Assembly: GCA_965637545.1 (NCBI GenBank)
Contig: OZ281494.1
Span: forward strand, 12,896,001 to 12,960,000
From: Phallusia mammillata
Lineage: Eukaryota
Length of the DNA: 64,000 nt
Direction of reading: 5' to 3'
Shown: positions 23,326 through 46,700 of the stretch, in pieces
Numbering within the stretch: the first letter of the stretch is position 1
Layout: every line of letters starts with the position of its first letter
Program-made: the position numbers and the translations under genes
The notes under the pieces: generated by a model
The model's database searches: none
What the model saw: the letters and a program-made list of their open reading frames with translations, nothing else
What the model was told of the DNA's origin: nothing

Positions 23326-25020
23326 TTTTCTTCTTTTAGCTTGCTATTATAAAAAAAACGACTGTTTTGGGGGATTTATGGGCATGTTATAAATATTCTG
23401 GGGGGAGGGGTACTCTGTTGGGTGGGGGGAGGGTCTAAAACGTATGAACTCCGGAAGTTGTTGTCAAGGTAGTTTAAATAGTAAAACAGTTGTTGTCTTG
23501 GTGTATTAATCTCGCTTATGCAATACCGATATGTGCTAGAATTTGAAATGATCGTTATGAAAGTCTGTACTAAAACTACAAAACGATGAAATATGTGGGA
23601 GGGGGGTTGGGTTATTCTTATGTACAGCTATATCCTTTGTATCATAGATCTTCTGTCTTTTGTTTGCGTAAAAGCGGGGAATGTATCTAGCGCTCTGTAT
23701 AATTAAGCGCAGGAATAATTTACCATGGTTTAAACTACATTAATACGCAGAGCTGGATTTAGAGTCGACATGCAAAAACTGTGTCAAAGCAGCCATTTGC
23801 GGTCATTCCACTTCCAAACATCACAACTTTGTTGCTGCTTAACATGTTTGATTATGAACGAAAATAAAATTTCAATAAAAGCGCACACTTTCATGCGTGG
23901 CATTATTGGCGGGAAAACATGGCGGAAATTCTGAGTACCTCTTGCAGCATTTTAACCGAGATACTTGCTTCATGTTTAAACGTTAACATAAAATTACCGT
24001 CCTGGTGAATTGAAACATTAATTAGAACAGTTTTAAGTTTAGTTTTTGCGTCTTAAACGCTTCGAAAAACAAACAAAATTAAAACCCCCACGGTGGTCAT
24101 GTTTAAGGCTGGTTCAACCGATGTGAGTTAGGACGCCAAAGTCTCCGAAAGAGGAAAGCCGACAATTTGCAAGCTTGTTTGTTTGTTAGGATGACGAATT
24201 GACGACGAAGAGGACAGCGTGCAACTTTTTGTTTTGTTTCTAGGCAAAGTAAACACACATTTAAAACAAAAGCAGTTTTACTATATTTTTGAAAGTATTA
24301 ATGCAGTTAGTATGGTACTAGGGCTGTTTTGCAGGTCAAAATAATATTCTCATTTCAACAGCAAAGAAACGAAAAAGTAGTGTTATTAATTAAATGCTAT
24401 TAGCTATTGCCTATTGCGCTTAAGGATATTATGTCTAATTTATGAATAAAAGTAGATTTAAAACTTGCAAGCACAAATTTTAGTTCGCAAATTTAGTCCT
24501 GATCTAATTGCAAACATGCAGAAAATAACATGATATGTGCAAAATAACAAAAAATGTCTAAATTAAGAAATGTGATTAACGGTTTTAAATATAACACCTC
24601 GTTTTGATGTGCCACGTCCAACTGAGCAAGCTTATGTGTCATATACTCATATTGCATAAAAAAAACTCACCAGATTATGAGAAAAATACTTTACATGTTT
24701 ATTGTCCAGTCTGCAGAATATGGCAGTTCCCAACAATATCACAGGCATTTAGAAAAGGTTGTCTCGTGTGTGCGCTTGCACTGGCCTTAAGTCCGCCTGC
24801 AAGACAATGTTTAGTGCATACAATACAAGTAAGAGGGCCATGTAGTAGTTTGGGTAAATGCAGCTGCCATACTTGCAGATTGGTTTATTGTCAGGTTTGT
24901 TCACCTTATAAAGGCATTTCTGACATAATGATCTCAAGACATAATGCATTTACATACCTTAAAGTTAACATAGTTTTGTACTTTCAGTTTAAGCGATTAC
25001 AAAATAGTAACTTTGATGAC

Positions 25021-26691
25021 ATGATTTACTCCATACCACAGTACACCAAAACAGCTCTGGGCCTGTTGGATGAAATGAGAAAGAACAATGAGTTTTGTGA
25101 CATATACATCAACATTAATGGCAATAACTATGCAGCACACAAGGCAGTGCTTGTGGCTGGAAGTCTGTTCATGAGAGAAAGACTTGCTAAACTTTCTGGG
25201 ATTTTTCTGAACCTACATTTGAAGTTGTCTGACCCAGCGGTGTTTGATGATCTTCTAAAATTTCTATACACTGGAGAAATATTGCTGACAGAACAAAATG
25301 TTGCCGAAATAACAATGCTTGCCTCATACTTACAGATTAATGACATTTTAACATTAACTTCTCAGTTTTTAAATAGTATGCAACCTGTGGAAAATTTTAG
25401 CTCAAGCATTCCATTGTTTGAGGTTGCTGTTGAACATGATGGTCTATTGGAAGATTTTGATTCTAATGAGCCCGAAGAAAGCCAATTAGACGATACAAAC
25501 CTTTGTAATGACTCATCGTCAGATATGGAATGCCAGCAGAAAATTCCTTCATTTTGTACAAAAAAAGATAACTTGACCAGGGTAGCATTCATTGCAGAAG
25601 AGCAAAAATATCGCTGCAAAGTTTGCTGCAAAGATTTTTTACGGAAATCAACTTGTTCAAGTCACTGCATGACACACACCATTGACGTTTACTTTTGCAC
25701 AGACTGTTGCAAGCCCTTTGATACTCCTGAACAATTAAATGTGCATTATTCACACAATCAAACATGTTTACACTTTGCAAAAGAACAACAGCAGGTTAGC
25801 AGAGATTGTAACGACTTTCTTACCAAACAACAAGTTAATGATGGGTTTAGGTTTAAGTGTGTTGATTGTTTTAAAGCATTCCAAGATTTTAAAACATTTC
25901 AAGATCACAGACAGACAAAACATAATGTAGAGGAAGCACTCACGTGCCCATTTTGTGAGGAATCCTTTGAAGATAGTGATTCTTTGTGTGATCATATTCA
26001 AGAGCATTACAGGACAGATAGTGCAGACGCGAACAAAAAAACAAACAAATTGGACAAAATGAGTGCAACATGCCTACACTGCAATAAAGTATTTCTTAAC
26101 CGTCGCAATTTACAGCGACACTGCAAAGAGACTAGATGCGGAAAAATGTCAATTAAAAAGCGCCCAAGCAAAAATGTTGATGACAAAACAAAGGAAATTT
26201 TTGCTTTTCAATGTGCATGTGGTCCTGGCTTTTCAACTTTTGCAGAATTTGCAACACACAGTGAAGAAAAGCATGCAATGGCTGTTGATATGTTTTGTCA
26301 GTTTTGTGGTATACTATTTGGAAATGAAGAGTGGCTTGAAAAACATGTACAACAACATGTGGCTGAAAAGAAAGCTGCCATTGAAAACGGGGGAGAAAAG
26401 TTTACTTGCCAGCTGTGCGAACTAACATTTGATCATGAAGACTTATTTGAGCAACATAATAAGCAAAAATGTTCTGATTCTTGTCGATTTTGTTCTAAAC
26501 CTTTTGACAAACGTCTGAACCTTGTACGTCACATAAAAATGCACACTGGTGAAAAACCATTCCCTTGCTTTGAATGCAATAGCAGATTTGGTCGTAAAGA
26601 TACAATGTTTCAACATTTGCGTGTCATGCACTCAATTGTAATGCCAAAGCAGCTTGTGGCATTAAAATTTCCTGGTAAAACAAGCAGGTGA
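25021..26691 (+). CDS. BTB/POZ-zinc finger protein, array member 1 (intronless CDS)
   Basis: BTB MIYSIPQY...LLDEMRKNNEFCDIYINING...HKAVLVAGS...LLKFLYTGEI; many C2H2/C2HC fingers including HTGEKPFPC. Start set at the family MIY motif, not at 24604. Confidence 0.92.
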   Translation: MIYSIPQYTKTALGLLDEMRKNNEFCDIYININGNNYAAHKAVLVAGSLFMRERLAKLSGIFLNLHLKLSDPAVFDDLLKFLYTGEILLTEQNVAEITMLASYLQINDILTLTSQFLNSMQPVENFSSSIPLFEVAVEHDGLLEDFDSNEPEESQLDDTNLCNDSSSDMECQQKIPSFCTKKDNLTRVAFIAEEQKYRCKVCCKDFLRKSTCSSHCMTHTIDVYFCTDCCKPFDTPEQLNVHYSHNQTCLHFAKEQQQVSRDCNDFLTKQQVNDGFRFKCVDCFKAFQDFKTFQDHRQTKHNVEEALTCPFCEESFEDSDSLCDHIQEHYRTDSADANKKTNKLDKMSATCLHCNKVFLNRRNLQRHCKETRCGKMSIKKRPSKNVDDKTKEIFAFQCACGPGFSTFAEFATHSEEKHAMAVDMFCQFCGILFGNEEWLEKHVQQHVAEKKAAIENGGEKFTCQLCELTFDHEDLFEQHNKQKCSDSCRFCSKPFDKRLNLVRHIKMHTGEKPFPCFECNSRFGRKDTMFQHLRVMHSIVMPKQLVALKFPGKTSR

Positions 26692-27181
26692 TAGTGAATT
26701 TGCCAGTACTGATCTAACTCATACCTGGGCTTTGTGTGTTTAACAGCTATGCATATTTATGGCCCTTTGGTTGTCTCCATCTGACCTGTTTAAGCTATTT
26801 GGGTATTACAGAATAAATATGTGTCATGCATAGACTAAAGCAGCATTGCTTACTCGCATACAAAATAATGAAAAAAACATGTGACTGTGACACAAAAGTA
26901 ACATAATGATATATATACTCTTTTCACTTGTCAAAGTCTATGATTGTCGAACTATTCGTAATGAAAAAATGGTGCAAAGCTGTAAAAAAATTGCCAGAGT
27001 CATGTTTTGTTATTTATGTCTGTGCATTTTGTAGGTTCCAGTGGCAACTTGCAAAATTAGTGATACCTTATGCATTTTGTCATACATACAAAATTTGTTT
27101 TTTAAGTTTGTTTAAATCTTTCTTTATGTTTTCTAGACAAGTTTGCTGTAGGGTTGTTAATAAATTGAAACTTCGCAGAAA

Positions 27182-28873
27182 ATGATTTTTTCATCACCCG
27201 AGTACCCTGTGACAGCCCTGAAGCTGCTAAATGAAATGCGACAAAACAATGAATTCTGTGACATTCTGATCAGCATCAATGGAACAAAATATGCGGCACA
27301 TAAAGCCATTTTGGTTGCTGGCAGCCAATACATGCGACAACATCTTGCCAACCTTACTACAAAGGTGTTTGTTCTTAATTTGCAGTTGACAAGTCTAAGT
27401 GTGTTTGAAGAAGTTCTACAGTTTCTGTACAATGGACAAATTGAACTTACAGAGCAAAATATTGCTGAAATGACCATGTTAGCTTCCTATCTTCAGATGC
27501 CGGAACTGCTAAATCTTACTTCCCAGTTTATTAACAGCTTTCAAGAGTTTAGTGTTGCAAATGAATTGGCCGAGTTGGAATACTCAATTGAACCACAGGA
27601 TGTTTCGAATGACCAAATGAGTTTTCTAGACCAAGATGATAGTACTGAGAATGAATTGACTTCTTCACCTGCCAAAAAACAGAAAACAAGCACTTGCAAT
27701 GAAGAAGATAACTCTACAATAAAGCTTTACGAGCGGCGGTGGAAAAAATTTCAATGCAAAACTTGTGGTAAACAGTTTTCACGCAAATATATTTGTATCA
27801 ACCACTGCTTATCACATGTTGATAAGAGCAGTGGCTCATTCTTATGCAATCATTGTGGAAACCTCCATAAAACTGTGGATGAGTTAAGAACTCATTATTC
27901 ACAAAGCAGAGAGTGTTGGCTTGCAGGACTGAATCGTTCACAACAAAACTCCACCCTCTTTCCTTATTTAAGCAAGCGTGATATCTTAAATGGATTACGA
28001 TTTAAATGTGATGTTTGTTTTGAAAAATATGAGAATTTTGTTCCTTTTCAAACTCACAGGCGCAATGAACATGGAATAGAAGAGACCCTGAAATGTTCAA
28101 TATGCAATGAATGTTTCGATACAGAGGAGTTTCTTACTTGTCATATACCAGAGCATTATAAAGTAACAAAGAATTACGAAAGGCAACAAAGGAGTACAAA
28201 AAGACCAACATACCAGCCTAAAGACACAGATCCAAGCTGTCCAATTTGTCGTAAATTATTTTCGTGTAAAAAAACACTAAAGCGTCACTTGGAAACCAAC
28301 AGAAGAGGACACTGTGGAAAACTTCTTCAGAAAATTAATAGCTCTGAAGAAACTAGTTCACCCACAGAAGAAGAACAGAATGAGTCTTCAGACAATATTA
28401 CCGGTTATCTGTGTGATGGTTGTAAGGTCGGATTTGAAAAGTTCGCTGAATTTGCATCGCACTGTCTAGAACTGCATGGCACCAATCCTGAGATGAAGTG
28501 TAGGTTTTGTGAACTTGTGTTTGCAAAAGAACTATGGGTTGACAAACATGTAGAGTATCATGTCACTCAAAAACAAGAAGAAACAGCCAAGGGAGAGGAA
28601 TACACATGCCAACTTTGTGCCGCCACATTTCAAAGTGACAATAATTTTCAGTGCCACAAAACAATGAAATGTGCATCTGAGTGCAGGTTCTGTGGAAAAA
28701 GGTTCAGTCGATTTGCTAATCTTAGAAGACATGTTCGCACTCATACTGGGGATCGACCATATCCATGTTTTGAGTGTGATTTATCATTTGCACGGAAAGA
28801 CATCTTGTTTCAGCATCTTCGTCTGAGACATTCCATTGTAATGCCAAGGCAGTCTATGATTGAAACAATGTAA
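27182..28873 (+). CDS. BTB/POZ-zinc finger protein, array member 2 (563 aa)
   Basis: BTB FCDILISING..HKAILVAGSQYM..FLYNGQI; fingers ending HTGDRPYPCFECD. Confidence 0.93.
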   Translation: MIFSSPEYPVTALKLLNEMRQNNEFCDILISINGTKYAAHKAILVAGSQYMRQHLANLTTKVFVLNLQLTSLSVFEEVLQFLYNGQIELTEQNIAEMTMLASYLQMPELLNLTSQFINSFQEFSVANELAELEYSIEPQDVSNDQMSFLDQDDSTENELTSSPAKKQKTSTCNEEDNSTIKLYERRWKKFQCKTCGKQFSRKYICINHCLSHVDKSSGSFLCNHCGNLHKTVDELRTHYSQSRECWLAGLNRSQQNSTLFPYLSKRDILNGLRFKCDVCFEKYENFVPFQTHRRNEHGIEETLKCSICNECFDTEEFLTCHIPEHYKVTKNYERQQRSTKRPTYQPKDTDPSCPICRKLFSCKKTLKRHLETNRRGHCGKLLQKINSSEETSSPTEEEQNESSDNITGYLCDGCKVGFEKFAEFASHCLELHGTNPEMKCRFCELVFAKELWVDKHVEYHVTQKQEETAKGEEYTCQLCAATFQSDNNFQCHKTMKCASECRFCGKRFSRFANLRRHVRTHTGDRPYPCFECDLSFARKDILFQHLRLRHSIVMPRQSMIETM

Positions 28874-29333
28874 AAAAATGTGATATGTGTGTGCTGACAC
28901 TTTAATTCTATATGATCTGTGTTAAATTTTGCTTACATTGATAAACTGCAAACTTTATGTACCAGCGGTTTCCATCTATTTATAATCATACACTTATACA
29001 TAAATAATGGTTCATTGCCATTTCTGTGCAGGTAGAATTTCAACCTTACTAAATATCCTTATGTACCACATTGAATTATTTGCATGCCACAGGTGAATGG
29101 CTGGAAACCACTGGTAAACATCATTGTATTAGTGCATGGTTTAGGTATTTCCTTTTTTACGCTGTGTAAAATTGTGCATTAGTTTAAAGCAAACAATAGA
29201 TTGAAATGTTGTGGTGTTATAACAATGTGTGTGTGTATATATGTTGAAGTCACAATTGCAACCATTTATTTCAATGCGTCTTTTACATTTGCAGGAAAAA
29301 ATAGGAAAAACTTACTGTTTAATTTCTGCTAAA

Positions 29334-31412
29334 ATGATCTATGTTGCTACTGAGCATTCCATCACAGTTTTGAAGCTGCTAAACAATCTCCGAAAAAACA
29401 ATGAATTCTGTGACATCACTGTTAACATAAATGGCTCCAAGTTCCGTGCACACAAGTCAGTACTTGCAGCAAGTAGTCAATATATGCGACAACATCTACA
29501 ATCTGAAAACTTTATACAGTTAAGTTTAAAGTTGAAAAGTACCACGATTTTTCAAGATGTTCTTGAATTTTTGTACACTGGAGAAATTGTGTTGACAAAT
29601 GAAAATATTGCTGAAGTGACCATGCTGGGTTCATACTTGAAAATTAATGATCTAACTAGGCTTACTGTTCAGTATTTAAATGGAATGCAAGCAAAAGGCA
29701 GTCTTGCTTCCCAAAAGTCACCATCTGTTCAAGTCATTGTACATGAAGGAAAAAGTTTAAACCCTTTCAACCAAAAATTTACTGTAAAGGATGGTAGACT
29801 TGCAACCTGGCAAACACCAATTAAAAAAATAAAAACTGAATCCTACCAATCCATGCAAACATTAAACCTAAATTCAAAAGTACTTTTGCTATCAGAAAGG
29901 AAAACTGATGATGAAAGGGAAGATTTTGATGACCTTGAACCAGCGTTTGAAGATGATACATTAATGCAAAGTGACAACGATTCTCTGCCTATTCATGAAT
30001 CACCAATGAGTGTTTCATCCTTCTATTTCAAGTCAATTATTCCACAAGCTTCTGGCATCAGTGATCGCCATGCTGTCAATGAGTCTTTGTCAAGCAACGA
30101 ACAGATAGAGCCCAATAAAATTGAACTTGAACCTGAAGTTGAACTGACTATGAAGGGGAGTCTGCTACTGAAAGAACAGTTTATGTCAGAACCCTATCTT
30201 ACCATGATGGACATATCGAATGGTCTTTTGTTTAAATGTGACATTTGTTTGGAAACATTTTGTAACTTTGATTTATTTAAAGAGCATAGAATGTTGTCAC
30301 ATGAATTAGAAGAAACACCAAAGTGCTGGATATGTGGAGAACAATTTGATTCTGGTAATGACCTTGCTCTGCATGTTCATGTCCATTATTTTGAGAAAGG
30401 TGATAAAATATTTAGAACTATTACCCAATCTGTAGAAGCAAATATTTTTCCTTGTCTTATGTGCAGTGAACAATTTTCCAAACACAAAGATTTGCAGCAA
30501 CATTTGGAAACAAGCCATGAAGAGGACTGGCCTTTTACTTGCACCAAATGTGGTGTTACTTTTGAACATAACCAAGCCCTTGGATTGTCTTTACACATAT
30601 TGTCACTGCATGCAAAGAGAAAAAAGCAATCAGCTTATTTCAGTGAGTCACAAAGAAACGAAAAAGACAAGGAGTATTTATGCACAGATTGTGGCTTGAT
30701 TTATACATCGAAGGAAATTTATGAGGAGCATGTTGAATCAAAGTGCACTCAAAGAGGTCATGTTTGCCAAATTTGCTCACGTTCTTTCACCAGACCTCAG
30801 TTACTAAGGCGTCATCTAACTCTTCCAAGGTTCTCCTGTGGTGAAGAATTGAAGAAATGGAGGAAAGATAATAATAAGATTAATGTCACAGAGGTTTTGC
30901 CACGACAAAATCCTGTCCCTGGATACCTTTGTGGAGACTGTGACTCAGGTTTCCAAAAGTTTAATGAGTTTAATACACATAGACTGGAAAAACACAATGC
31001 TAGTGAAGAACCGAAATGTCGTTTTTGTGATCTGGTAATAAGTGATGAAAAAAAACTTGATAAACATGTTAGTATCCATGTTGCAAGTAAAACATCAGCT
31101 AGGACCAAAAGGCGTCACCCTTCTCTTACCGAAGATGGAAAATGGACATGTATTGTTTGTGAAGCTGTTTTCGAACTTGAAAGTGATTATAGGTTTCATA
31201 AAACACTTCGATGTGCATTAAAATGCAGATTTTGCAACTTTTCCTCTGGAAAGAAGCAACGTCTTAGACAACACGTCAGTGGGCACTTAAGGGTCTTGCC
31301 TTTTCCCTGTTTAAAGTGTGACAAGGCATTTAGTTGGAGACAAAGTTTGCTAAACCACATGCACACTCAACATGCTGTTGAAAGTGTAATAAACTTAGAT
31401 GATTCAATATAA
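29334..31412 (+). CDS. BTB/POZ-zinc finger protein, array member 3
   Basis: MIYVATEH start; BTB FCDITVNING..HKSVLAASSQYM..FLYTGEI; finger array; close paralog of member 4. Confidence 0.92.
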   Translation: MIYVATEHSITVLKLLNNLRKNNEFCDITVNINGSKFRAHKSVLAASSQYMRQHLQSENFIQLSLKLKSTTIFQDVLEFLYTGEIVLTNENIAEVTMLGSYLKINDLTRLTVQYLNGMQAKGSLASQKSPSVQVIVHEGKSLNPFNQKFTVKDGRLATWQTPIKKIKTESYQSMQTLNLNSKVLLLSERKTDDEREDFDDLEPAFEDDTLMQSDNDSLPIHESPMSVSSFYFKSIIPQASGISDRHAVNESLSSNEQIEPNKIELEPEVELTMKGSLLLKEQFMSEPYLTMMDISNGLLFKCDICLETFCNFDLFKEHRMLSHELEETPKCWICGEQFDSGNDLALHVHVHYFEKGDKIFRTITQSVEANIFPCLMCSEQFSKHKDLQQHLETSHEEDWPFTCTKCGVTFEHNQALGLSLHILSLHAKRKKQSAYFSESQRNEKDKEYLCTDCGLIYTSKEIYEEHVESKCTQRGHVCQICSRSFTRPQLLRRHLTLPRFSCGEELKKWRKDNNKINVTEVLPRQNPVPGYLCGDCDSGFQKFNEFNTHRLEKHNASEEPKCRFCDLVISDEKKLDKHVSIHVASKTSARTKRRHPSLTEDGKWTCIVCEAVFELESDYRFHKTLRCALKCRFCNFSSGKKQRLRQHVSGHLRVLPFPCLKCDKAFSWRQSLLNHMHTQHAVESVINLDDSI

Positions 31413-31737
31413 GTGTTATCAAACATGTCAACTTTATCAAAACCATCATTACAATTGCCTTTTTTCAGTTTATTTCTAATGTAAGCAGTTCAGTGATATA
31501 CCATTGATTTCATATGCTTTGCTTCAATTTGTTTTGCTACACTACAGTACTTTTTTACTTGCCTTACCTTCATTATGTTTAGATAAGGTTTTGATGCTTT
31601 ATTTTCTTTTTTCAAATAGGAAAAAAACTGTGTAGATACCATTAAAGTTATTTTGTACATCCTAATGGGAAAGATTTCTGAATTGCCTCATTGCTGAACA
31701 CTTTGGATTTAAAGATTGCTGGTTCCCTTATTGAGTC

Positions 31738-33864: not shown

Positions 33865-34052
33865 CTGTCCAAATTTTTTTGGAAAACTTTTTATTTTTTT
33901 TAGTGTTTTTAACACAGATTTTTTTTGTTTATTTGTGTATATGTGTACTTTCATGTCTTGTTTGTTTTTCAGGTTGTAGGTTAGGTGACAAAATATTTTT
34001 GGTGACAAAAATATTCTTTGTAATATTCTGAATCACTGAAAACCATATTATC

Positions 34053-35720: not shown

Positions 35721-35831
35721 AACAATCTCACCACTGTAACCCCAACCATCCTCACACCAAATTATGAGACTTTGACACTAAATCACTGAATGGTTTAATA
35801 CTTTACCCAAAATGTGACTCCTGGTCATAAC

Positions 35832-36360: not shown

Positions 36361-36616
36361 ATCATGACTTTAAACATGCATATTTAGCAAAAAGTTGTAA
36401 ATGTGTGCAAGTTTTTTGTTGCGAACAAGAAAAATGAGTTGTGTACTATTTGATACAAATAAATTAACCCTTCTTTTGTATAATGCACCATTTTGTTATT
36501 TTGTAAACTCATACCGATGTTTGATTTCTGTTTCCAGGTATGTAGGGATGTGTTTAGGGCAAAACCTGTATCTGAATGTTCATATTTAACTGAAAGTGTA
36601 TGAAAACACAACAATC

Positions 36617-38761
36617 ATGATTTATTCTTTGCCTCAATATCCAGAAATGGCATTGAATTTGCTGAGTGAAATGAGAAAAAACAAAGAATTTTGTGACATT
36701 GTCATTAATGTTAGTGGCAACAGGTATTGTGCTCACAAAGCTGTACTTGCAGCAGGAAGCCAATACATGCGACAACATCTTGCCGGACTAACTGGAACTT
36801 TCTTACACTTGCAATTACAGTTGACAAAGTGGAATATCTTCGAAGACGTACTTCGCTTCATATACACGGGTGAAGTGGAATTGACTGAACAAAATGTGGC
36901 AGAAATGACTATGATAGGAACATTTCTGCAAATTTCTGACCTTACAATGTTAACCTCACAATTCCTTAATAGTATGCAGCGGAAAACTAATCCTAAAGTT
37001 GTTTCCGAACCTACTGCTGATGTCAATTCCATTGAAAATTATAGTGTTAATGAAAGTGTTCCCAGCCCTACAGCCAGTGTTGATCCCAGTGAAGATTACA
37101 CTGTTAATGGTATTGAGGAATTTACTGGAATGGAGACCTTCGTAGCTCATGTTGCTAAAAGTGTTGCAAAGGCGGCAAAGACAAAGAAAAAACCTGATGA
37201 GAATGATGACAAGCCATGGACTCCGGGTATGCCACGCTATAAGCCGAAAAGTGCTACAAAACGCCCAGCTAAATCACAAGCCAAATCTTTGCCAGCTAAA
37301 AAGACTAAAAATCAGAGCAAAGTATCAAACAATGTGAGCAACGATTCTATGATTGTGGAAATAAGTTCTAATGTTGCAACAAGCGCAGTGACAAAGACAA
37401 CAAACCAAAAAACATCTGTTACCAATCCCAAAGTTTCTAAACCAGTTCAGTTTGAAATTATCCCTGAAACACTCACTGATAATAATGAAGAAAAAACTGA
37501 GCAGTCACTAATCGTAACGGAATCCACTTTTGTGTTGTTTGACAAGAAAACAGGCAAGTTTTTGTGCAGGTTCTGCAAAAGGCAAAACACAAGATACAAC
37601 GCATGTCTTAACCATGCCGAAAGCCATAAAAACAAACCCTTTGCATGTAGATACTGTGGCGAGTCTTGCAAAACAACCAGTTTACTGTTATACCATTATC
37701 AGAAAAACATAATTTGTAATCAGTCAACAAAAAAGGACCCAAATGCCTTTTTAAGCAGAAAGGATTTTGATGATAGATTTCTGTTTAAATGTGGACTATG
37801 TTTTGCGAGATGCAAGAATTTTGACTTCTATCAAAAGCACAGAAAAGAAAAACATGACATTGATGAGGTGTTGATGTGTTATGTCTGTGATCAATCATTT
37901 GTAGGAAAGGCAACATTACAACAGCACATTGCAGGTCATTATGCTCCGCTGGAACAAACATCTGACAAAGATCTTGAAAATAATGTACAGCATCAGGAGC
38001 AGAAAATTGTTGATTCTAATTGCATGTGCAAATTTTGTGGCAATATCTTTCCTTCTATTGAAGAATACAAAAAACATATGGTAATCAAGTGTGGATTGAA
38101 AGGCCATCAATGTACATTTTGTCACAGAACGTTTACTACTCCCCAGGTGCTCAAGAGACATTTTAAGAATGGCCCTTGTCATGCACGATGGCGAAAAGTT
38201 AGAAAGAGTGAAAATCCACCGCTTACGCGAAAATCATTTGAAAATACAAATGTACAAATGCCAGAATATGGTTATTTTTGTGAAACTTGCAACAAAGGCT
38301 TTAAGAAATTTGCAGAATTTTCAGCTCACCAAGTTAAAAACCACAAAGAAACCTTTGCAAAATTGAAATGTCGCTTTTGCAACTTAGTATTTAGAGATGA
38401 AAAGTGGTTTGCCAATCATACTGGTTACCATGTTAATCAAACCACCAAAACCACTGAGGACTTGACTAAACCATATCGTTGGAAATGTATTGTATGTGAA
38501 AAAGAATTTTCTACAAAGGAAGACTTTCATCATCATAAGCAAATGTCCTGTGCAAAAGAGTGTCGATTTTGTGGCGAGTCAATTCCAGACAAATGGAAGC
38601 TTAATAAGCACATTGCAAAGCATACAAGCCCTAAACCGTTTGATTGCTGGAAGTGTGAAGATACATTTCGACTTCATGATGAACTATTTAAGCATCTTAG
38701 AGATGATCATTCTGTTCACATGCCTAATACTAATATAGAACCAATACTTTTGCCAAAATGA
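36617..38761 (+). CDS. BTB/POZ-zinc finger protein, array member 6
   Basis: MIYSLPQY start; BTB FCDIVINVSG..HKAVLAAGSQYM..FIYTGEV; Lys-rich linker; finger array. Confidence 0.92.
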   Translation: MIYSLPQYPEMALNLLSEMRKNKEFCDIVINVSGNRYCAHKAVLAAGSQYMRQHLAGLTGTFLHLQLQLTKWNIFEDVLRFIYTGEVELTEQNVAEMTMIGTFLQISDLTMLTSQFLNSMQRKTNPKVVSEPTADVNSIENYSVNESVPSPTASVDPSEDYTVNGIEEFTGMETFVAHVAKSVAKAAKTKKKPDENDDKPWTPGMPRYKPKSATKRPAKSQAKSLPAKKTKNQSKVSNNVSNDSMIVEISSNVATSAVTKTTNQKTSVTNPKVSKPVQFEIIPETLTDNNEEKTEQSLIVTESTFVLFDKKTGKFLCRFCKRQNTRYNACLNHAESHKNKPFACRYCGESCKTTSLLLYHYQKNIICNQSTKKDPNAFLSRKDFDDRFLFKCGLCFARCKNFDFYQKHRKEKHDIDEVLMCYVCDQSFVGKATLQQHIAGHYAPLEQTSDKDLENNVQHQEQKIVDSNCMCKFCGNIFPSIEEYKKHMVIKCGLKGHQCTFCHRTFTTPQVLKRHFKNGPCHARWRKVRKSENPPLTRKSFENTNVQMPEYGYFCETCNKGFKKFAEFSAHQVKNHKETFAKLKCRFCNLVFRDEKWFANHTGYHVNQTTKTTEDLTKPYRWKCIVCEKEFSTKEDFHHHKQMSCAKECRFCGESIPDKWKLNKHIAKHTSPKPFDCWKCEDTFRLHDELFKHLRDDHSVHMPNTNIEPILLPK

Positions 38762-39217
38762 TGATGATGATTATTTTTAGTCTTTTGGCAAAATAGTAGT
38801 CACCATAATCATGTGTATTCTATTTTATGTGTATTTCAACTAAAGTGTTTATTTAGAAACAAATACTGCCAACTTATCTAGTTATGAATAAATAACAATG
38901 TGTCCAAAATCAATGTGATATTAATGCTGCCAAAACATCTTTTTTATTTATTGCTTTAAATGTGAACACACCGATAAGACTTAAAACTGTTTAGCTTTCC
39001 TATTAACCTGCACCATTTTAATTTATCCTCACAGGCTTGTTTCTATTTAAATTTCACAATTTGGTACTAGTTTTACCTGATGTTGTTCTTAATTTGCTCA
39101 TACAATAGTCTGTTCTGTGTTTTCATTATGTCCTGTACATACAGTTTTATCATTTTTATTTTTCACTTTCTCAAGGTTTAGGTGTTTTTTTCCAAGGCAG
39201 AATAAAAAAAAACTGCA

Positions 39218-41068
39218 ATGATATATTCATCATTGAACTTTTCTCTGAATTCCTTGAAATTTTTAAATCAACTTCGCAAGAAGAAACAAACATGTGACAT
39301 TAACATTAAGCTGAATGGGGTAAGTTATCCAGCACACAAAGCAATCCTGATTGCAGGCAGTCCATTTCTGCATCAGCACTTGTCCGTGGAGAGTGGATCT
39401 TCCTTTACAATTGGTCTCAAATTGACAAACACTAAAGTAATGGAAGAAATTCTAACTTTTCTCTACACTGGCGATATTGATTTGTCCCAAGACAAACTTG
39501 CCGAGACAATGCTACTTGGAGCATATCTACAAATATCTGAAATACAAACACTGACCACCAAATTTTTGCAAAGTGTACAAACTGTTGGTGTAAAAAGCTC
39601 AGCTCCAATTGAAGTCACTGTTCACCACTTTGTTGATTCCAATGAGGAATATGATGAAGAAAATGATTTTGATGATGAACCAAATCTGGATGAATCTGAA
39701 GAACCAATAAAGGAGGTTACACAGGAGCTTGTCCCCTTTGTTGCTGAAGCTTTACAGGATACAGAAGACAGGTTCAAGGATGTAAAATTTGATGAGGATT
39801 TGAAAAAGCATGTTTGCAAGATTTGCAATCGTCCTTTTAATAACCGCAATAACTGCATGCGGCATACACTTTTACACACTGGAGTAAGGCCCTTTATGTG
39901 TGACCTTTGTGGAAAGTCTTATAAAAGAAAAGAAACACTAAACAAGCATTGTTCCTCTGGTTCTTGTCGAAAAGGTATAAGCCCTACTAAACAACGCAGA
40001 AGAGACAGACAACAGCGATGGATATTTAGAAAAAAGGTCAAGGGAAATAGTAACAATTACAGTATAACTGATCCTCAAATACTAGAATACTTGGACACTA
40101 ACAGCGCACCAGACATTTTTTTGTGCACGAAGTGTGGTAAAGAAAATTCTAGTTTGGGAAATTTTCGCCGTCACATCCGTATCCATACAGGTGAAAAACC
40201 ATTTCAATGTACCACATGTTTGAAACACTTTCCAAGAAAGGATTCATTACAAGCACACACATCAAGATGGAAGAATGGAGCATGTTACGTAGCTCCAGAT
40301 AAGCAATTACCAGAAGGTGCAAGTATTACGAGAACTGTTTCATTAATTAATTCCCACATTAAATCAGCTGGTACTACAAGAGCCATTTTGGAAACAAATT
40401 CCCAGGAAACTTTACCTAGCGATGGTTTAATTCAGGAATTGGAGAATGCTCAAAACTTTTGTCCCTTTGTTTGTGCTGAGTGCGATCTCAGATTTGAGCA
40501 TTTTCAAGACTTTTCCAATCACCGAAGTGTTGAACATGATGTAACTGAAGAGATAAAATGTCCAATATGCCATTTGGAATTTGGAAAAGAGCTGTGGCTG
40601 ACCAAACATTTATTCTACCACAACAAAGAAAGACAGAATACTACTGAATTGTCAACAATAAAGAGAAAAGTTTTTGTGTGCATTTTATGTGCTGAATCAT
40701 TTCAAGATGAAGAATCTTTTCAGGCTCATGGATCAAAAATTTGCATAACTTACTGTCGTTTTTGCAATAAAGTATTTGCAAGCAGGGCTCATCTTGATCG
40801 CCACGTACGTACTCACATTAATGAAGATTTTTTTGCCTGTTCTGTGTGCAAGGACTCATTTAAAACACGCAAGAAGCTTGCAGCTCATTTAAAGCAGGAA
40901 CACTCAATCATAATGCCCAAATATGCTAGATTTGGCAGCATTCCACAGATCGTAGAAGTTGATGAAATAGTATCAAACAATACACAAGATGAAACTAATA
41001 TCCCCATGGAAACAGAGGTTGAAGTCATGGGTTCTGCTGATGAAGGAAATGACTCAATAACCAACTGA
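39218..41068 (+). CDS. BTB/POZ-zinc finger protein, array member 7 (616 aa)
   Basis: BTB TCDINIKLNG..HKAILIAGSPFL..FLYTGDI; classical HTGVRPF and HTGEKPF linkers. Confidence 0.93.
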   Translation: MIYSSLNFSLNSLKFLNQLRKKKQTCDINIKLNGVSYPAHKAILIAGSPFLHQHLSVESGSSFTIGLKLTNTKVMEEILTFLYTGDIDLSQDKLAETMLLGAYLQISEIQTLTTKFLQSVQTVGVKSSAPIEVTVHHFVDSNEEYDEENDFDDEPNLDESEEPIKEVTQELVPFVAEALQDTEDRFKDVKFDEDLKKHVCKICNRPFNNRNNCMRHTLLHTGVRPFMCDLCGKSYKRKETLNKHCSSGSCRKGISPTKQRRRDRQQRWIFRKKVKGNSNNYSITDPQILEYLDTNSAPDIFLCTKCGKENSSLGNFRRHIRIHTGEKPFQCTTCLKHFPRKDSLQAHTSRWKNGACYVAPDKQLPEGASITRTVSLINSHIKSAGTTRAILETNSQETLPSDGLIQELENAQNFCPFVCAECDLRFEHFQDFSNHRSVEHDVTEEIKCPICHLEFGKELWLTKHLFYHNKERQNTTELSTIKRKVFVCILCAESFQDEESFQAHGSKICITYCRFCNKVFASRAHLDRHVRTHINEDFFACSVCKDSFKTRKKLAAHLKQEHSIIMPKYARFGSIPQIVEVDEIVSNNTQDETNIPMETEVEVMGSADEGNDSITN

Positions 41069-41681
41069 CATAAAATAAGCAGTCTGTAAAACCATACCAT
41101 TGCTAAAAATCAATTTAAGATTGTTTTGTGACATTCTATTTTGAGCTAAGCTGGTAACAATGAACTTTAAATTTATGTGTTTGCTTGGTAAGATTCAACT
41201 GAACAAAGCATTTAAATTAACTCGTGAATTGTATTAAGCAGGAAAGTGCACAACTACTAAACGAAAAAGTGGGATAAAAGGTAAAGTCTTTACTAATATC
41301 AAAGTTGGAACGTTTTTCATGACTTATTATGGGTGAGAAAACAAACCCTAAATTTGTTGCATAGAATTGCTAAATTGGTTGTGACCAAAGTGTTTAAAAG
41401 ATCATGTTTTATATGTTGCCCAACGTTAAAACAGCAACAACAAACCAGAAAGTTTGTTGATGTGAAAAAAGTCCTGTAACTTTTGATATGTATATGACAG
41501 AAATTGGTACAACTGATACTGATGTTAAACATTTTTGTTCATTGCTTTTGTGTTTGTATCTGCTTATGTGATGTTTTGTATGAAATAGATAATACATGTA
41601 TTTGGATTTTTCAGGTGACTGTGATAGGGGTCTGTATTTAGGATTTGGTAGTGGCAGTTGCAAATATTTAGGGACGACAAA

Positions 41682-43412
41682 ATGTTATACGTTTCCCCAA
41701 ACTTTGGTGGAAAAACTCTCCAAACTCTGAATGAAATGCGAAAAAATGAGCGCTTTTGTGATATCACCATTGCTATTGGTAGTTACAAATTCCCAGCTCA
41801 TAAATCTGTTTTAGTGGCAAACAGCCCTTATATGGCACAAGAAATTGAAAAACTACATGGAAAAACTTTGACAATTGGCTTGACTTTGTCAAATCCTGCT
41901 GTGTTTGCTGAGTTACTGAACTTTTTATATCTTGGTGAAATCGAGCTGACACAGGAGAAGTTAGCAGAGGTTATGCTACTTGCCTCTTTTCTTCAAATCT
42001 CTGAAATACTAAAGATTACCTCCGAGTTTGTGCGCGCGATGCAAAGTGCTAACACAAGTATTAACAATAATGCCATAACAGACAACATTCATTCGGATGC
42101 AGAAATTTCTGATGCTGAACAAATGACTGATGATGCTGGAAATACCTCGTTGGAGTCAAGTAATTCTGAAACATCAGCAATACAACAAGCAAACACTAAT
42201 GTTCTGTCAAGTACTTCAAACGCAATGGAAGTTTATTCAACACCCAGTAATGCTTTAAACTCTAGTATGGTGGAAAAATCACCAGGACAATTTAACTGTT
42301 CAGGATGCAAAATGGTTTTTACCAATCAGCTTGATCGTGCAATGCACACTGTCAAGTACTGCAAAAACAGGAAGAAAATGAAAAATTTATTGCAAAAGAA
42401 GAAAAAATCTGGTCGACTAGAGATACAAACCACTAAAGATGATGATCTAGAGACATATGGCAATTGTATTGAAATGTACATTGAACATGTTGAAAATGAA
42501 AGTGTAAAGAAGTTCTGTCGCAATCTTCAAGGCAAAAAGCGAAAATGTCTGGCTTGTGATTTTGAGTGTGCCAAAATGGTTGAATTTCGACGTCATGTGA
42601 CGCAACACACTGGAGATACTCCTTTTGGTTGTCGTGCCTGTGGTAAAGCTTTTAAGCGAAGCGACATTTTAAAGGCCCATTTGCTGCGAAGTACTCGCAA
42701 TTCTTGTGGACAATATTTAGTTGACCATAAAGGTATGTTCAAAGACTTTAATGTGACACCAACATCACAGCTAACAAAGAAGTTTGAAAGTTTGGTGAGT
42801 TCTACACTTGAAGTCTTCTCAACTGGAGAAAATTTCCTGAATTTTAAATGCAATAAATGCATTGAAGAGTTTGAAAGCTTTGAGGAGTTTTTTTCTCATA
42901 GAAAAGATGAACATGACATAGTTGAAGAGATCAAGTGCCCAATTTGCAAGCTTGTCTTTGGAAAGGAGTCTTGGTTGGATGCACATCTAGAGTATCATCG
43001 AACTAAACCCAACAATACAATGACTGTGGCTACACCTGTTGTAAAAACCAAAGTATTTCAGTGTATCTTATGTGAAGATGTGTTCCGCACAGAAGATGCC
43101 TACGAGCTGCATCGACGAAAAAACTGTGCCAACTGTTGTCGATTTTGCAAGCGAGTATGCAAAAGCAGATACCACTTAGATCGACATGTTAGGTCCCATA
43201 TCAAAGACAAGCCTTACAAGTGCCCTGTTTGCCATAGGAGCTTTAAACACCATGAAAGACTGGACATTCATGTAAAGGCAAAACACTCAATGACAATGCC
43301 CAAAGACATTCGCCAAGCTCAAGCTGCTCATGTTATTGAGATTTTGGATGAACTTTCAACTGAGCTGTTAGATGAAATGGGTATCGGAGAAACAACTGAA
43401 CTTCCCCAATAA
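41682..43412 (+). CDS. BTB/POZ-zinc finger protein, array member 8
   Basis: MLYVSPNF start; BTB FCDITIAIGS..HKSVLVANSPYM..FLYLGEI; HTGDTPFGC and KDKPYKC fingers. Confidence 0.92.
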   Translation: MLYVSPNFGGKTLQTLNEMRKNERFCDITIAIGSYKFPAHKSVLVANSPYMAQEIEKLHGKTLTIGLTLSNPAVFAELLNFLYLGEIELTQEKLAEVMLLASFLQISEILKITSEFVRAMQSANTSINNNAITDNIHSDAEISDAEQMTDDAGNTSLESSNSETSAIQQANTNVLSSTSNAMEVYSTPSNALNSSMVEKSPGQFNCSGCKMVFTNQLDRAMHTVKYCKNRKKMKNLLQKKKKSGRLEIQTTKDDDLETYGNCIEMYIEHVENESVKKFCRNLQGKKRKCLACDFECAKMVEFRRHVTQHTGDTPFGCRACGKAFKRSDILKAHLLRSTRNSCGQYLVDHKGMFKDFNVTPTSQLTKKFESLVSSTLEVFSTGENFLNFKCNKCIEEFESFEEFFSHRKDEHDIVEEIKCPICKLVFGKESWLDAHLEYHRTKPNNTMTVATPVVKTKVFQCILCEDVFRTEDAYELHRRKNCANCCRFCKRVCKSRYHLDRHVRSHIKDKPYKCPVCHRSFKHHERLDIHVKAKHSMTMPKDIRQAQAAHVIEILDELSTELLDEMGIGETTELPQ

Positions 43413-43700
43413 TCAGTTATTAATCTTCATACTTAGCGATTTACATACGGATAATACCTTCAGTGTGACAAACTATGTAATCTTAACACATCTTTGAGAA
43501 CCGCATTTTGTCTGCTTTGACTGTTGCAACCCAGCTTGAAATTATTTGTTTTCAAGACTAACATTTTTACATTTTTAGTTGTACACATTTTGTGATAATA
43601 TGATTTTGCATATGTGTGTCCAAATCTGTTTTTTTTTAAGTGTTACAATTTAATGTTCTTACAGGGGAAATACTGTACAATAATAGACAGTGACTGAGTT

Positions 43701-46700
43701 ATGTTGCCTCGATGGACTGTGTCATTGGAAGGTGGCCCTCGGAGAGTTAACCACTCTTCTGCTCTGATTGGACATAGAATATTTATGTTCGGTGGTTACT
43801 GCATGGGCGTGAATTATGAAGTTATCAGCCTTATTGATGTCCATGTCTTTAACACATGTAAGTTACAGTGTATAAATTTCCCTTTAAAATAAGTTTTGTG
43901 TAAGTCTGCTTGAAATTGTTTAGTTGGAATCACTTATTTGTATTGAAGTTTTAATAGTTGATTATTGATGTATTAATATAACTGTGTGTTTTGTTTAAAT
44001 TTTAGATACCTACAGATGGGCAAGAATACCAACAGAAAAAACAACATTTGAAAATATTGCACATGTGCCTTACATGAGGTACAGTACATAGTTTTTTTTG
44101 AAACAGCAATATAAAATATGTGTGTTTCTTAACTATGAAAATATATTTGTAGAGTAAGGTTTGATTGACAGGTGATAACACTTGATGTGTTTTCCAGATA
44201 TGGTCATGCATCTGTAGCTATTGATAATAAGGTGTATTTGTGGGGCGGACGGAACGACTCATTTGGTGCATGCAATGTATTGCACTGCTTTAACACTGGT
44301 GGGTTTAGTGTGCCATTTAATTTAAAGCAGATTAAAACATGTGACAATGTTGCATATGGAATAGAAAAGTGTTTTTGCTACCTCTGCCAACCTTTCTTTC
44401 CAGTGATGTGATAGATATGTGGAACACACATGAAAACAAAATAGTGCTTTATGTTCAATTTATTTTGATGAAGCTTGTAGTACTCAATTCATAAAAAATG
44501 TATACAACAAGCTAAATTCTTTTTCTTGCTTTGCTACAAACTTAACAGCCTGCGTCACTAGCTTTGGAACACAACTGTAATGTAACAAGCTAGCAATGAC
44601 AAAATAATTTTGGCAACAAAAACAACAGAATGCTAACAACTATGGTAAAGCAAAAATAAACAAAATTTTGTGTGCATGGCGAGCCCCTCATGGTATAAAA
44701 TTTCTGCATTAGATCTTTTTTATAAATAAGCTGTTGCTGCCAGGCATAGTATCAAGTTTATAGAGCTCTTCTGGCAAATGTATCTTTATTCCGACGTTTC
44801 GACGTCCTATACAGGTCGTCTTCATCAGGGTAAATAACACTGAATGCGACTAGAACAGTGCACGATAAACAAAGGAAAAAAGAATGAAACGCAAGCACGT
44901 CACAACACAACGAAAACACTGAGCGATAACGAATGATTGGGTCTCTAATCTTTGAGCAGGTGCCTGTAGCACGCTGGAAGCATCACGTCTGTTTTGACCC
45001 GGGAGCCTGACTACAGGAAAAGACTATTTCTTGAGTCATGGAATATTCACCAACGGGGCAACACAATGACCATCAAAACAGACGTGATGCTTCCAGCGTG
45101 CTACAGGCACCTGCTCAAAGATTAGAGGCCCAATCATTCGTTATTGCGTGGTGTTTTCGTTGCGTTGTGACGTGCTTGCGTTTCATTCTTTTTTCCTTTG
45201 TTTATGGTGCACTGTTCTAGTCGCATTCAGTGTTATTTACCCTGATGAAGACGACCTGTATAGGACGTCAAACGTCGGAATAAAGATACATTTGCCAGAA
45301 GAGCTCTATAAACTTGAGATCTTTTTTATGGTGAACTATGGTCCTCTATCTTCAGGCAGCTTCAGTACTACTGTACACACACTTTGTAGGTTAAAACTAT
45401 TGTTCCAAGTAATTGTAGTGATTAGACATAACAGATACATTAGTTGCAAATTGCAATGACTTTATCTAAAAATAAACTGGAAAGTTTTTTCCCCATGCTT
45501 GCAAAGCAAGTGGCGCTTGTAGCATCATGACTTACCTTAGGTGTGTTAATGATTTTAGTTATATTATTATTCAGACAAACTGCATTGGAAAAAAGTGCCA
45601 CTGAAAGGGACATATCCTGGTGCCAGAGATGGGCATGCTATGTGTGTTGTAAACTCCAAAATATACATTTTTGGTGGATATGAGCAGGAGGTATGTTATT
45701 GCACAACAAATGATTAGTTTTCACATTAAGCATGTAAGATTTGCACGTTTCATATTTCCTTTTAGGCTGACTGTTTTTCCAATCAAATGTTCATGATTGA
45801 CCTCAAAGAAAAAATGTGGCACTTTATTCAAGCAAAGGTATTCAGTTTGTATTCCGTTTCACATCTATAACTTTCTGTGTTGATTATGCCTGCTGCCAAG
45901 TATAGAGTATCTCTTCATACACACCTTGTGCTACATAATTAAATAGGCTTGCTTTTTTATAATAACACACACATTTTTGTTTTCATTTAACTGGTACTCT
46001 ACTTTATTGTCAGGTGAGTATAGAAACTTTAAATTCAATTTTTTCTTTTATGTGCTGAATCAATCTCTTGGTTTCTGCAGCACAAAAGAATTAACATGAC
46101 CTAATTAATAAACTATGCATTAAAACTCAACGATTTGTTTCTTTGAGGAATCTATCTTGCTATTTGATTTTTTATTATTTTTAGGGTGGTATTCCAGCAT
46201 CATGGAGAGATTTTCACACAATAACATCCCATGGTGATCTAATTTATGTGTTTGGTGGCCGTGGTGATGTAAATGCTCCTATGCACTCAAATAGAGATAT
46301 TTATGACAACACTTTAAAGGTAAATGAACAATGAAGAAGTAGCAGTCTTGTTTATATTGTTTGTTTTGGGTGCAGTGTGGTTGGCAAACTTTTACACCGG
46401 GTAAAATTCTTCTCCAAATATCTGCATGTGGTTTCAAATATACATTGTGTCAATCCATCAATTATGGGATGATTTTTTTTTTTCAAAAAAACTAAACTGA
46501 AAATTCAATAAATCATGTAAACCAGAATGAATCAAGTGCATTAAAATTGTAAAGATAAAATGATGTTGAAATAATGAATAAAATGTATTTAAATTGTTTC
46601 TCTATTTTATAGGTTTTTAACACAAAAACATGTGAGTGGAGTAATCCAGTTAATCCAACATCTATTGCTCCATTGGGACGACGAAGCCATTCTGCATGTA

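What the first reader, a model, noticed from the sequence alone, without database searches (positions are those of the whole stretch)
24970..43701. Candidate polycistronic, trans-spliced operon of eight BTB-ZF genes plus KLHDC3
Seen: nine same-strand genes with stop-to-ATG spacers of 490, 460, 325, 188, 896 (367 without the MITE), 456, 613 and 288 bp. Each ATG is preceded by a pyrimidine-rich AG acceptor 33-118 nt upstream (AG ending 24987, 27136, 29294, 31619, 33972, 36537, 39175, 41614, 43664). Between members 4 and 5 only 108 nt separate the stop from the acceptor, leaving almost no room for a promoter and leader exon. I see no AATAAA in several spacers (after members 2, 3, 4 and 8). Established: ascidian operons are resolved by SL trans-splicing with little or no intercistronic DNA. 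Inference: a large transcription-factor operon, possibly starting at ZFR. Alternative: one upstream non-coding exon cis-spliced to nine alternative acceptors.
Basis: partly seen in the sequence, partly recalled or inferred. Interest (0 to 1): 0.85.

Follow-up and report, generated by a model that had tools for sequence, protein, structure and literature searches.

The report
SL trans-spliced BTB-zinc-finger gene array

Summary
Eight single-exon BTB + C2H2 genes lie on the + strand, with the stated spacers and AG sites, followed by a Kelch (KLHDC3-like) gene.

The genome is Phallusia mammillata: member proteins are 99-100% identical to its UniProt entries.

Public cDNA contigs laid on 31300-37299 begin at the predicted acceptors of members 4, 5 and 6. 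Each carries the 16-nt ascidian spliced leader ATTCTATTTGAATAAG, which is absent from the window. So SL trans-splicing is shown at 3 of 3 tested sites, and the "shared cis-spliced leader exon" alternative fails there.

Upstream transcripts fill the spacers. Contigs end at most 80, 46 and 10 nt before the next acceptor. One leader-bearing member-5 contig runs through the whole 896-bp spacer, MITE included. That meets the operational Ciona operon rule (same strand, downstream gene spliced, under 100 nt).

All spacers are strongly CpG-depleted (o/e 0.31). The only CpG-normal island (23.4-24.7 kb) lies between ZFR and member 1.

No contig crosses an acceptor, poly(A) sites are unmapped, and five junctions are untested. 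Operon about 0.55; separate promoters with short outrons about 0.3. A start at ZFR is unlikely. This is a new member of a known kind.

The scan noted other candidate operons in this genome, all unchecked.

The parts
23400..24700 (.). Unique CpG-normal island between the ZFR stop (about 23324) and the first acceptor. Candidate promoter and outron start for member 1 or for the whole array.
   Evidence: CpG o/e is 0.96 here, against 0.31 in the pooled spacers and 0.46 in the coding sequences. No other copy in the window. The promoter role is inferred, not shown.
24986..24987 (+). Predicted trans-splice acceptor of member 1 (untested).
   Evidence: CAG, 33 nt before the ATG.
25021..26691 (+). Member 1, intronless BTB-C2H2 gene (556 aa).
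   Evidence: The exact protein is in UniRef/nr.
27135..27136 (+). Predicted acceptor of member 2 (untested; passes the strict site test).
27182..28873 (+). Member 2 (563 aa).
29293..29294 (+). Predicted acceptor of member 3 (untested).
29334..31412 (+). Member 3 (692 aa). Its transcript contigs run on to 31476-31539.
31618..31619 (+). Trans-splice acceptor of member 4, shown. A probable second acceptor ends at 31635.
   Evidence: Contigs of X7 and X12 start at 31618 preceded by ...ATTCTATTTGAATA. Contigs of X1 and X5 start at 31636, just after a TAG.
31738..33864 (+). Member 4 (708 aa). One leader-bearing contig spans 31618-33926 unspliced.
33971..33972 (+). Trans-splice acceptor of member 5, shown.
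   Evidence: The X7 contig carries the leader followed by GTTGTAGGTTA, which equals 33973-33983. The X1 contig starts at 33973.
34053..35720 (+). Member 5 (555 aa).
   Evidence: 100% identical to a P. mammillata UniProt entry.
35721..36527 (+). Transcribed spacer, best read as a long 3' UTR of member 5 reaching within 10 nt of the next acceptor.
   Evidence: The X7 contig with the leader at its 5' end runs 34000-36527. X1, X5 and X12 contigs cover up to 36461, 36397 and about 36389.
35824..36368 (.). MITE-like insertion (26-nt terminal inverted repeats) inside that transcribed spacer.
36536..36537 (+). Trans-splice acceptor of member 6, shown.
   Evidence: Contigs of X7 and X12 start at 36536 preceded by the leader. 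The X5 contig also starts at 36536.
36617..38761 (+). Member 6 (714 aa).
39174..39175 (+). Predicted acceptor of member 7 (untested). It is a weak AAG; alternative AG sites end at 39181, 39196 and 39200.
39218..41068 (+). Member 7 (616 aa).
41613..41614 (+). Predicted acceptor of member 8 (untested).
41682..43412 (+). Member 8 (576 aa).
43663..43664 (+). Predicted acceptor of the Kelch (KLHDC3-like) gene (untested).
43701..43892 (+). First coding exon of the Kelch-repeat (KLHDC3-like) gene, a possible ninth cistron.

Best explanation
This is a tandem array of eight old, intronless BTB-C2H2 transcription-factor paralogues of Phallusia mammillata.

Each mature mRNA is monocistronic. At least members 4, 5 and 6 get their 5' end by trans-splicing of the 16-nt ascidian spliced leader onto an AG 80-118 nt before the ATG.

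The DNA between coding regions is not empty spacer. It is mostly the 3' UTR of the upstream gene, which runs to within 10-80 nt of the next acceptor.

The most likely mechanism is a Ciona-type operon. RNA polymerase II starts in the CpG-normal island at about 23.4-24.7 kb, downstream of ZFR. It transcribes through the array, perhaps into the Kelch gene. Each cistron is then released by SL trans-splicing at its acceptor together with 3' end formation of the upstream mRNA at or just before that acceptor.

Shown: array anatomy; SL addition at three acceptors; transcription of the spacers; absence of the leader from the locus.

Inferred: the polycistronic precursor; the single promoter; SL addition at the other six acceptors; membership of the Kelch gene.
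For: (1): in two independent studies (X7, X12), contigs begin at 31618 and 36536 with GTACGGG + ATTCTATTTGAATA, followed by the genomic AG. An X7 contig carries the leader joined to the 11 bases that follow the AG at 33972.

(2) This string is the published Ciona SL (PMC7986045, PMC1488885). It has no match in the window with up to 1 mismatch.

(3): upstream contigs end at 31539, 33926 and 36527, which is 80, 46 and 10 nt before the next acceptor AG. The 36527 contig has the leader at its other end, so one mRNA-like molecule spans SL, member 5 and the whole 896-bp spacer. Depth arithmetic leaves no unlisted contig over the gaps.

(4) The Ciona operational operon definition is: same strand, downstream gene SL-spliced, under 100 nt between models (PMC1488885, PMC2760879). 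SLOPPR's k-means cut-off is 85 bp (PMC7986045). Three of three tested junctions pass.

(5) No AATAAA lies within 40 nt upstream of any of the eight downstream acceptors, as in 16 of 18 Ciona operon junctions (PMC1488885).

(6) All members are single-exon genes, a class enriched in Ciona operons (38% against 15%, PMC2760879).

(7) Pooled spacer CpG o/e is 0.31. Random same-length sets elsewhere in the window give 0.70 +/- 0.15, and only 0.3% are as low. The one CpG-normal island (0.96) sits upstream of member 1. In Ciona, methylation, and hence CpG loss, marks transcription units (PMC4776710, PMC3827831).
Against: No contig crosses any acceptor, so no dicistronic RNA was seen. The contig sets also have gaps inside coding sequence, so their ends are not true RNA ends.

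Poly(A) sites were not mapped. The hallmark of Ciona operons, a poly(A) site exactly at the acceptor AG, is therefore unproven.

Ciona outrons peak near 100 nt and can be as short as 51 nt (PMC4691747). A promoter inside the upstream 3' UTR or coding end remains possible.

About 29% of regions upstream of annotated Ciona gene starts are methylated (PMC4776710), so CpG depletion does not exclude internal promoters.

X7 has no contig on the last 200 nt of member 3 and its UTR although member 4 is covered. This could reflect independent expression, or merely a divergent allele.

The only relative found elsewhere (L001, 41% identical to member 7) has 1.4 kb of upstream DNA without a paralogue.

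Five junctions and six acceptors are untested.
Confidence: 0.55

Rival explanations
1. Independent genes. Each paralogue has its own promoter inside the spacer or the upstream gene's 3' UTR. Each makes a short outron (about 50-150 nt) that is replaced by the SL. The tight packing is only a compact tandem array with overlapping transcription units.
For: About half of ascidian genes are SL-spliced without being in operons, and outrons peak near 100 nt (PMC4691747, PMC11155486). No bridging contig was seen. Most stop-to-acceptor distances (207-817 nt) could hold a small promoter. X7 lacks member-3 3' end contigs while member 4 is present. The distant relative L001 stands alone with a CpG-rich upstream segment.
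Against: Transcribed sequence reaches within 10-80 nt of each tested acceptor. That leaves no untranscribed room, so every promoter would have to lie inside the upstream mRNA. Only 108 nt separate the member-4 stop from the member-5 acceptor, and that stretch has no CpG and is 58% T. The spacers are more CpG-depleted than the coding sequence. There is no TATA-like box in six of eight spacers, though this is weak evidence since most ascidian promoters lack one.
Confidence: 0.3
2. Mixed architecture. Some junctions (for example 3-4, 4-5, 5-6) are operonic. Longer spacers (1-2, 2-3, 6-7, 7-8) carry internal promoters, giving two or more sub-operons.
For: Only junctions 3-4, 4-5 and 5-6 were tested. 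Internal promoters are known in nematode operons (my own knowledge). The largest annotated Ciona operons hold six genes (PMC2760879).
Against: CpG depletion is uniform over all spacers. No feature sets the untested spacers apart.
Confidence: 0.1
3. One locus-encoded non-coding first exon is cis-spliced to nine alternative acceptors, or the unit starts at the ZFR promoter.
For: All acceptors lie on one strand downstream of ZFR.
Against: The letters joined to acceptors 31619, 33972 and 36537 are the canonical SL, and this sequence is absent from the 64-kb window. ZFR ends 1.66 kb before the first acceptor, with a CpG-normal island in between.
Confidence: 0.03

Closest known systems
Ciona intestinalis/robusta SL-resolved operons (Satou et al. 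2006, PMC1488885; Satou et al. 2008, PMC2760879)
   Same: Same 16-nt leader sequence. Same-strand neighbours. Downstream cistrons SL-spliced. Under 100 nt between the upstream transcript and the downstream acceptor. No AATAAA near the junction. Rich in single-exon genes.
   Different: A different genus (Phallusia). Eight or nine cistrons against a maximum of six in the KH annotation. All the BTB members are paralogues of one family. Exact abutment of poly(A) site and acceptor, and a dicistronic RNA, are not shown here.
Caenorhabditis elegans SL2-type operons
   Same: Polycistronic logic, with downstream genes resolved by trans-splicing. Up to eight genes per operon (my own knowledge).
   Different: No specialised SL2: the same leader serves here. 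There is no roughly 100-nt intercistronic region with a U-rich element, and upstream cistrons lack a canonical AAUAAA.
Oikopleura dioica operons
   Same: Tunicate. A single SL serves both operonic and monocistronic genes. Upstream cistrons lack AAUAAA (PMC1488885).
   Different: Oikopleura has a different, longer leader and 23-30 nt intercistronic regions.
Vertebrate ZBTB (BTB-zinc finger) transcription factors such as MYNN, ZBTB11 and ZBTB41
   Same: N-terminal BTB/POZ domain plus C2H2 fingers. The nearest non-ascidian hits are ZBTB11, ZBTB41 and ZBTB39 at 21-24% identity.
   Different: No orthology could be established. The members are intronless, tandemly arrayed and very divergent from each other (27-57% identity).

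Membership tests
Ascidian (Ciona-type) SL-resolved operon | Neighbouring genes on the same strand | tested here: met
   Eight ORFs plus the Kelch gene, all on the + strand.
Ascidian (Ciona-type) SL-resolved operon | Downstream cistrons receive the spliced leader at their 5' end | tested here: met
   Met for members 4, 5 and 6 (leader identity). Members 2, 3, 7, 8 and the Kelch gene were not tested because of the reads cap.
Ascidian (Ciona-type) SL-resolved operon | Operational rule: under 100 nt between the upstream gene's transcript end and the downstream acceptor | tested here: met
   Contig ends at 31539, 33926 and 36527 against acceptors at 31619, 33972 and 36537, giving gaps of at most 80, 46 and 10 nt. 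This covers three of eight junctions and rests on contig ends, which are lower bounds on transcript ends.
Ascidian (Ciona-type) SL-resolved operon | No intercistronic DNA: the poly(A) site of the upstream mRNA coincides with the acceptor AG | tested here: inconclusive
   Contigs cannot show poly(A) sites. No A-tail loose ends were listed.
Ascidian (Ciona-type) SL-resolved operon | No AAUAAA within 40 nt upstream of the junction (16 of 18 Ciona cases) | tested here: met
   None within 40 nt of any of the eight downstream acceptors. The nearest is at 36458, 79 nt upstream of 36537.
Ascidian (Ciona-type) SL-resolved operon | An unresolved polycistronic RNA exists | tested here: inconclusive
   No contig bridges an acceptor in four runs. 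Such precursors are rare, and contigs break at graph branches, so their absence is not informative.
Ascidian (Ciona-type) SL-resolved operon | A single promoter upstream of the first cistron and no internal TSS | not testable with these tools
   Only a proxy is available: one CpG-normal island at 23.4-24.7 kb, with all spacers CpG-depleted.
C. elegans SL2-type operon | A specialised downstream leader and a roughly 100-nt intercistronic region | tested here: not met
   The leader seen at all three sites is the general ascidian SL.
Cis-spliced shared first exon (alternative acceptors) | The leader exon is encoded upstream in the same locus | tested here: not met
   The leader has no match in the 64-kb window with up to 1 mismatch.
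BTB-zinc finger (ZBTB) transcription factors | N-terminal BTB/POZ domain plus C-terminal C2H2 fingers | tested here: met
   Pfam BTB at E 1e-18 to 1e-23, and zf-C2H2 families, in all eight. Conserved Cys/His columns in alignment A1.

The most novel reading that the evidence does not exclude
A single eight- or nine-cistron operon, the longest yet seen in an ascidian, that grew by repeated tandem duplication of an intronless BTB-zinc-finger cistron inside a polycistronic unit. Each new copy, carrying only its own acceptor, would be expressed at once without acquiring a promoter. Operons would then act as nurseries for transcription-factor family expansion.
Probability: 0.35. Interest if true: 0.6.

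Novelty: new member of a known kind. Interest (0 to 1): 0.45.

Why it matters
Operons are well documented in Ciona, but I found no description of them in Phallusia in the searched literature.

If the whole array is one transcription unit, it would exceed the six-gene maximum of the Ciona annotation. It would also be an operon made of paralogous transcription factors. That would offer a simple route by which a gene family can expand without new promoters.

It would matter in practice too. Cis-regulatory screens and ATAC-based enhancer assignment in this embryological model would have to treat the eight genes as one regulatory unit.

If the genes instead have internal promoters, the locus is an ordinary compact SL-spliced tandem array.

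Tried and rejected
(1) The look-up of encoding contigs with the exact proteins of members 5, 7 and 8 found nothing on record. No further transcript contigs could be fetched that way.

(2) Three word-indexed protein searches and one full profile search gave no Ciona orthologue. The profile hit list was swamped by giant poly-zinc-finger proteins. Conservation of the array in Ciona, where operons and TSS-seq are published, could therefore not be tested.

(3) The one relative found, P0025/L001, comes from an unnamed Logan run. I could not tell whether that contig is RNA or DNA.

(4) Spacer-against-spacer and spacer-against-window BLAST found no shared element. No conserved promoter or processing motif emerged.

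(5) The TATA-box scan was uninformative.

(6) The listing of cluster members placed a 57-aa Logan protein (P0008) in member 1's cluster. It is not encoded in the window and was dropped.

(7) Contig depth was used only to check that no unlisted contig covers the acceptors. It was not used to compare expression, as the tool warns.

(8) The literature search for 'U1like' returned nothing.
Full report
**Anatomy**

The window has eight long + strand ORFs between 25.0 and 43.4 kb. Each begins with a conserved MIY/MLY start: 25021, 27182, 29334, 31738, 34053, 36617, 39218, 41682.

The stop-to-ATG spacers are 490, 460, 325, 188, 896, 456 and 613 bp, then 288 bp to an ATG at 43701.

Pfam finds a BTB domain and C2H2 fingers in all eight. 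The next gene carries Kelch motifs and the upstream gene carries DZF domains.

The paralogues are old, at 27-57% pairwise identity, but share one architecture (alignment A1). The spacers share no similarity with each other.

The 896-bp spacer holds a 545-bp element with 26-nt terminal inverted repeats at 35824-35849 and 36343-36368.
- The spacer is 351 bp, not 367 bp, without the MITE.
- AATAAA is indeed missing from the spacers after members 2, 3, 4 and 8, but one lies within the last codons of member 3 and of member 4.

**Organism**

Members 5, 6 and 7 are 99-100% identical to UniProt entries of Phallusia mammillata. These are named Myoneurin (A0A6F9DL18 and A0A6F9DL19) and 'ZF(U1like)-9' (A0A6F9DXX3). 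A 708-aa P. mammillata entry (Myoneurin, A0A6F9DMD1) has the length of member 4 and is very likely it, though I compared it only with member 5. A 99.7% match to member 8 (P0020) also turned up, but its source is not given. So the genome is an ascidian.

**Transcript evidence**

I laid four of them (X1, X5, X7, X12), from four studies, on 31300-37299. They behave as cDNA:
- Their contig sets total only 16-30 Mb.
- Contigs stop short of each acceptor and restart at it.
- In X7 and X12, contigs begin at 31618 and at 36536 with the loose letters (G)TACGGG ATTCTATTTGAATA, followed by the genomic AG.
- A third X7 contig carries TCTATTTGAATAAG followed by GTTGTAGGTTA, which matches bases 33973-33983. 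The aligner clipped it at 34000 because this allele has an indel in the 5' UTR.

ATTCTATTTGAATAAG is the published 16-nt Ciona spliced leader (PMC7986045, PMC1488885). The GTACGGG before it looks like the end of a template-switch oligo. That reading is my own knowledge, and it would mean the leader is the true 5' end of the cDNA.

The leader has no match in the window, even with one mismatch.

Contigs of X1 and X5 start at 31636, right after a second TAG. Member 4 probably has an alternative acceptor 16 nt downstream of the first.

**How much room is left between cistrons**

Member-3 contigs run to 31476, 31488 and 31539; the acceptor AG ends at 31619. The leader-bearing member-4 contig of X7 runs unspliced from 31618 to 33926; the acceptor AG ends at 33972.

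The leader-bearing member-5 contig of X7 runs to 36527, through the entire 896-bp spacer and its MITE. It ends 10 nt before the acceptor AG at 36537. X1, X5 and X12 also cover that spacer, to 36461, 36397 and about 36389.

I checked the per-bin depth figures against the listed contigs. They add up, so no unlisted contig lies over the gaps or the acceptors.

Untranscribed DNA before each tested acceptor is thus at most 80, 46 and 10 nt. Contig ends are not RNA ends, and these contig sets also have holes inside coding sequence. The true gaps may therefore be smaller.

**Comparison with defined ascidian operons**

In Ciona, operons were defined as same-strand neighbours whose downstream member is SL-spliced and whose gene models lie under 100 nt apart. 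On inspection almost all have no intercistronic DNA at all: the upstream poly(A) site coincides with the downstream acceptor AG. Sixteen of 18 lack AAUAAA within 40 nt (PMC1488885).

The KH annotation lists 1,310 such operons. The largest holds six genes, and single-exon genes are enriched (PMC2760879). SLOPPR's empirical cut-off is 85 bp (PMC7986045).

The three tested junctions meet the operational rule. None of the eight downstream acceptors has AATAAA within 40 nt, and all members are single-exon.

Two defining items remain open. Exact coincidence of poly(A) site and acceptor cannot be seen with contigs. No dicistronic contig was found, which is expected to be rare in any case.

**Sequence proxy for the transcription unit**

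CpG observed/expected is about 1.1 at 12.0-13.0 kb, the presumed ZFR promoter. It is low through the ZFR body and rises to 0.8-1.18 at 23.4-24.6 kb. It then stays at 0.07-0.84 without interruption from 24.8 to 44.6 kb.

| Region | CpG o/e |
|---|---|
| Pooled spacers | 0.31 |
| Pooled spacers without the MITE | 0.27 |
| Pooled coding sequences | 0.46 |
| Upstream island 23400-24700 | 0.96 |
| Random same-length sets elsewhere in the window | 0.70 +/- 0.15 |

Only 0.3% of the random sets are as low as the spacers.

The island is unique sequence. The next CpG-rich patch (44752-45317) is a foldback repeat in a Kelch-gene intron.

In Ciona, methylation targets transcription units (PMC4776710, PMC3827831). 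The pattern therefore fits one continuous germline-transcribed unit starting downstream of ZFR. It is only a proxy, because about 29% of regions upstream of annotated Ciona starts are methylated.

ZFR's last exon ends at about 23324, 1.66 kb before the first acceptor. A start at ZFR is unlikely.

**Rival reading**

About half of ascidian genes are SL-spliced without being operonic. Ciona outrons peak near 100 nt, with a mean of about 440 nt (PMC4691747, PMC11155486). Each member could therefore have a promoter lying inside the upstream 3' UTR.

Three further points weigh against a strict operon:
- X7 has no contig on the end of member 3 while member 4 is covered.
- The only outside relative retrieved (L001, 41% identical to member 7) has 1.4 kb of upstream sequence without a paralogue.
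- Five junctions are untested.

**Verdict**

SL trans-splicing is shown at three of three tested acceptors. The shared cis-leader alternative is rejected for those genes.

| Reading | Probability |
|---|---|
| Ciona-type operon (best supported, unproven) | about 0.55 |
| Independent promoters | about 0.3 |
| Mixed architecture | about 0.1 |

This is a new member of a known kind. It would be notable if all eight or nine cistrons prove to be one unit, longer than any annotated Ciona operon and made of paralogues.

Noticed in passing
window 31620-31636: Contigs of X1 and X5 start at 31636, just after a second TAG ending at 31635. Member 4 probably has an alternative trans-splice acceptor 16 nt downstream of the main one.
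   Followed up: partly
window 33973-34000: The X7 individual's member-5 5' UTR has only 16 letters between the leader and position 34000, where the reference has 27. This is an indel polymorphism in a near-duplicated GGTGACAAAA-ATAT motif.
   Followed up: no
window 31387-31392 and 33831-33836: AATAAA hexamers lie inside the last codons of members 3 and 4. The X1 member-4 contig ends at 33863, at the stop codon, so a very short-UTR isoform is possible.
   Followed up: no
window 33973-33990, 36538-36560, 39176-39185, 41615-41670: The 5' UTRs of members 5-8 begin G+T-rich and repeat a TTTAGG/GTAGG motif just after the acceptor. These may be extra acceptor AGs or a shared 5' UTR element.
   Followed up: no
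window 31665 and 36540-36600: Upstream ATGs and short uORFs lie in the trans-spliced 5' UTRs of members 4 and 6.
   Followed up: no
window 44752-45317 and 61846-61938: A CpG-rich foldback repeat (89% self-complementary over 573 nt) sits in a Kelch-gene intron, with a partial copy near 61.9 kb.
   Followed up: partly
window 29334-29483: The stored protein that matches member 3 (P0018) starts at Met51, so it lacks the first 50 residues of the BTB domain that the genomic ORF encodes.
   Followed up: no
L001 1-3630: This Logan contig of run DRR090687 (organism not named) encodes a 630-aa protein 41% identical to member 7. A pyrimidine-rich AG lies about 30 nt before its ATG, and a CpG-rich patch lies at 330-500. 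No paralogue lies within 1.4 kb upstream or 0.3 kb downstream.
   Followed up: partly
window 31300-31499: Run X7 has no contig on the end of member 3, while members 4-6 are fully covered. This could mean a divergent allele or independent expression.
   Followed up: no
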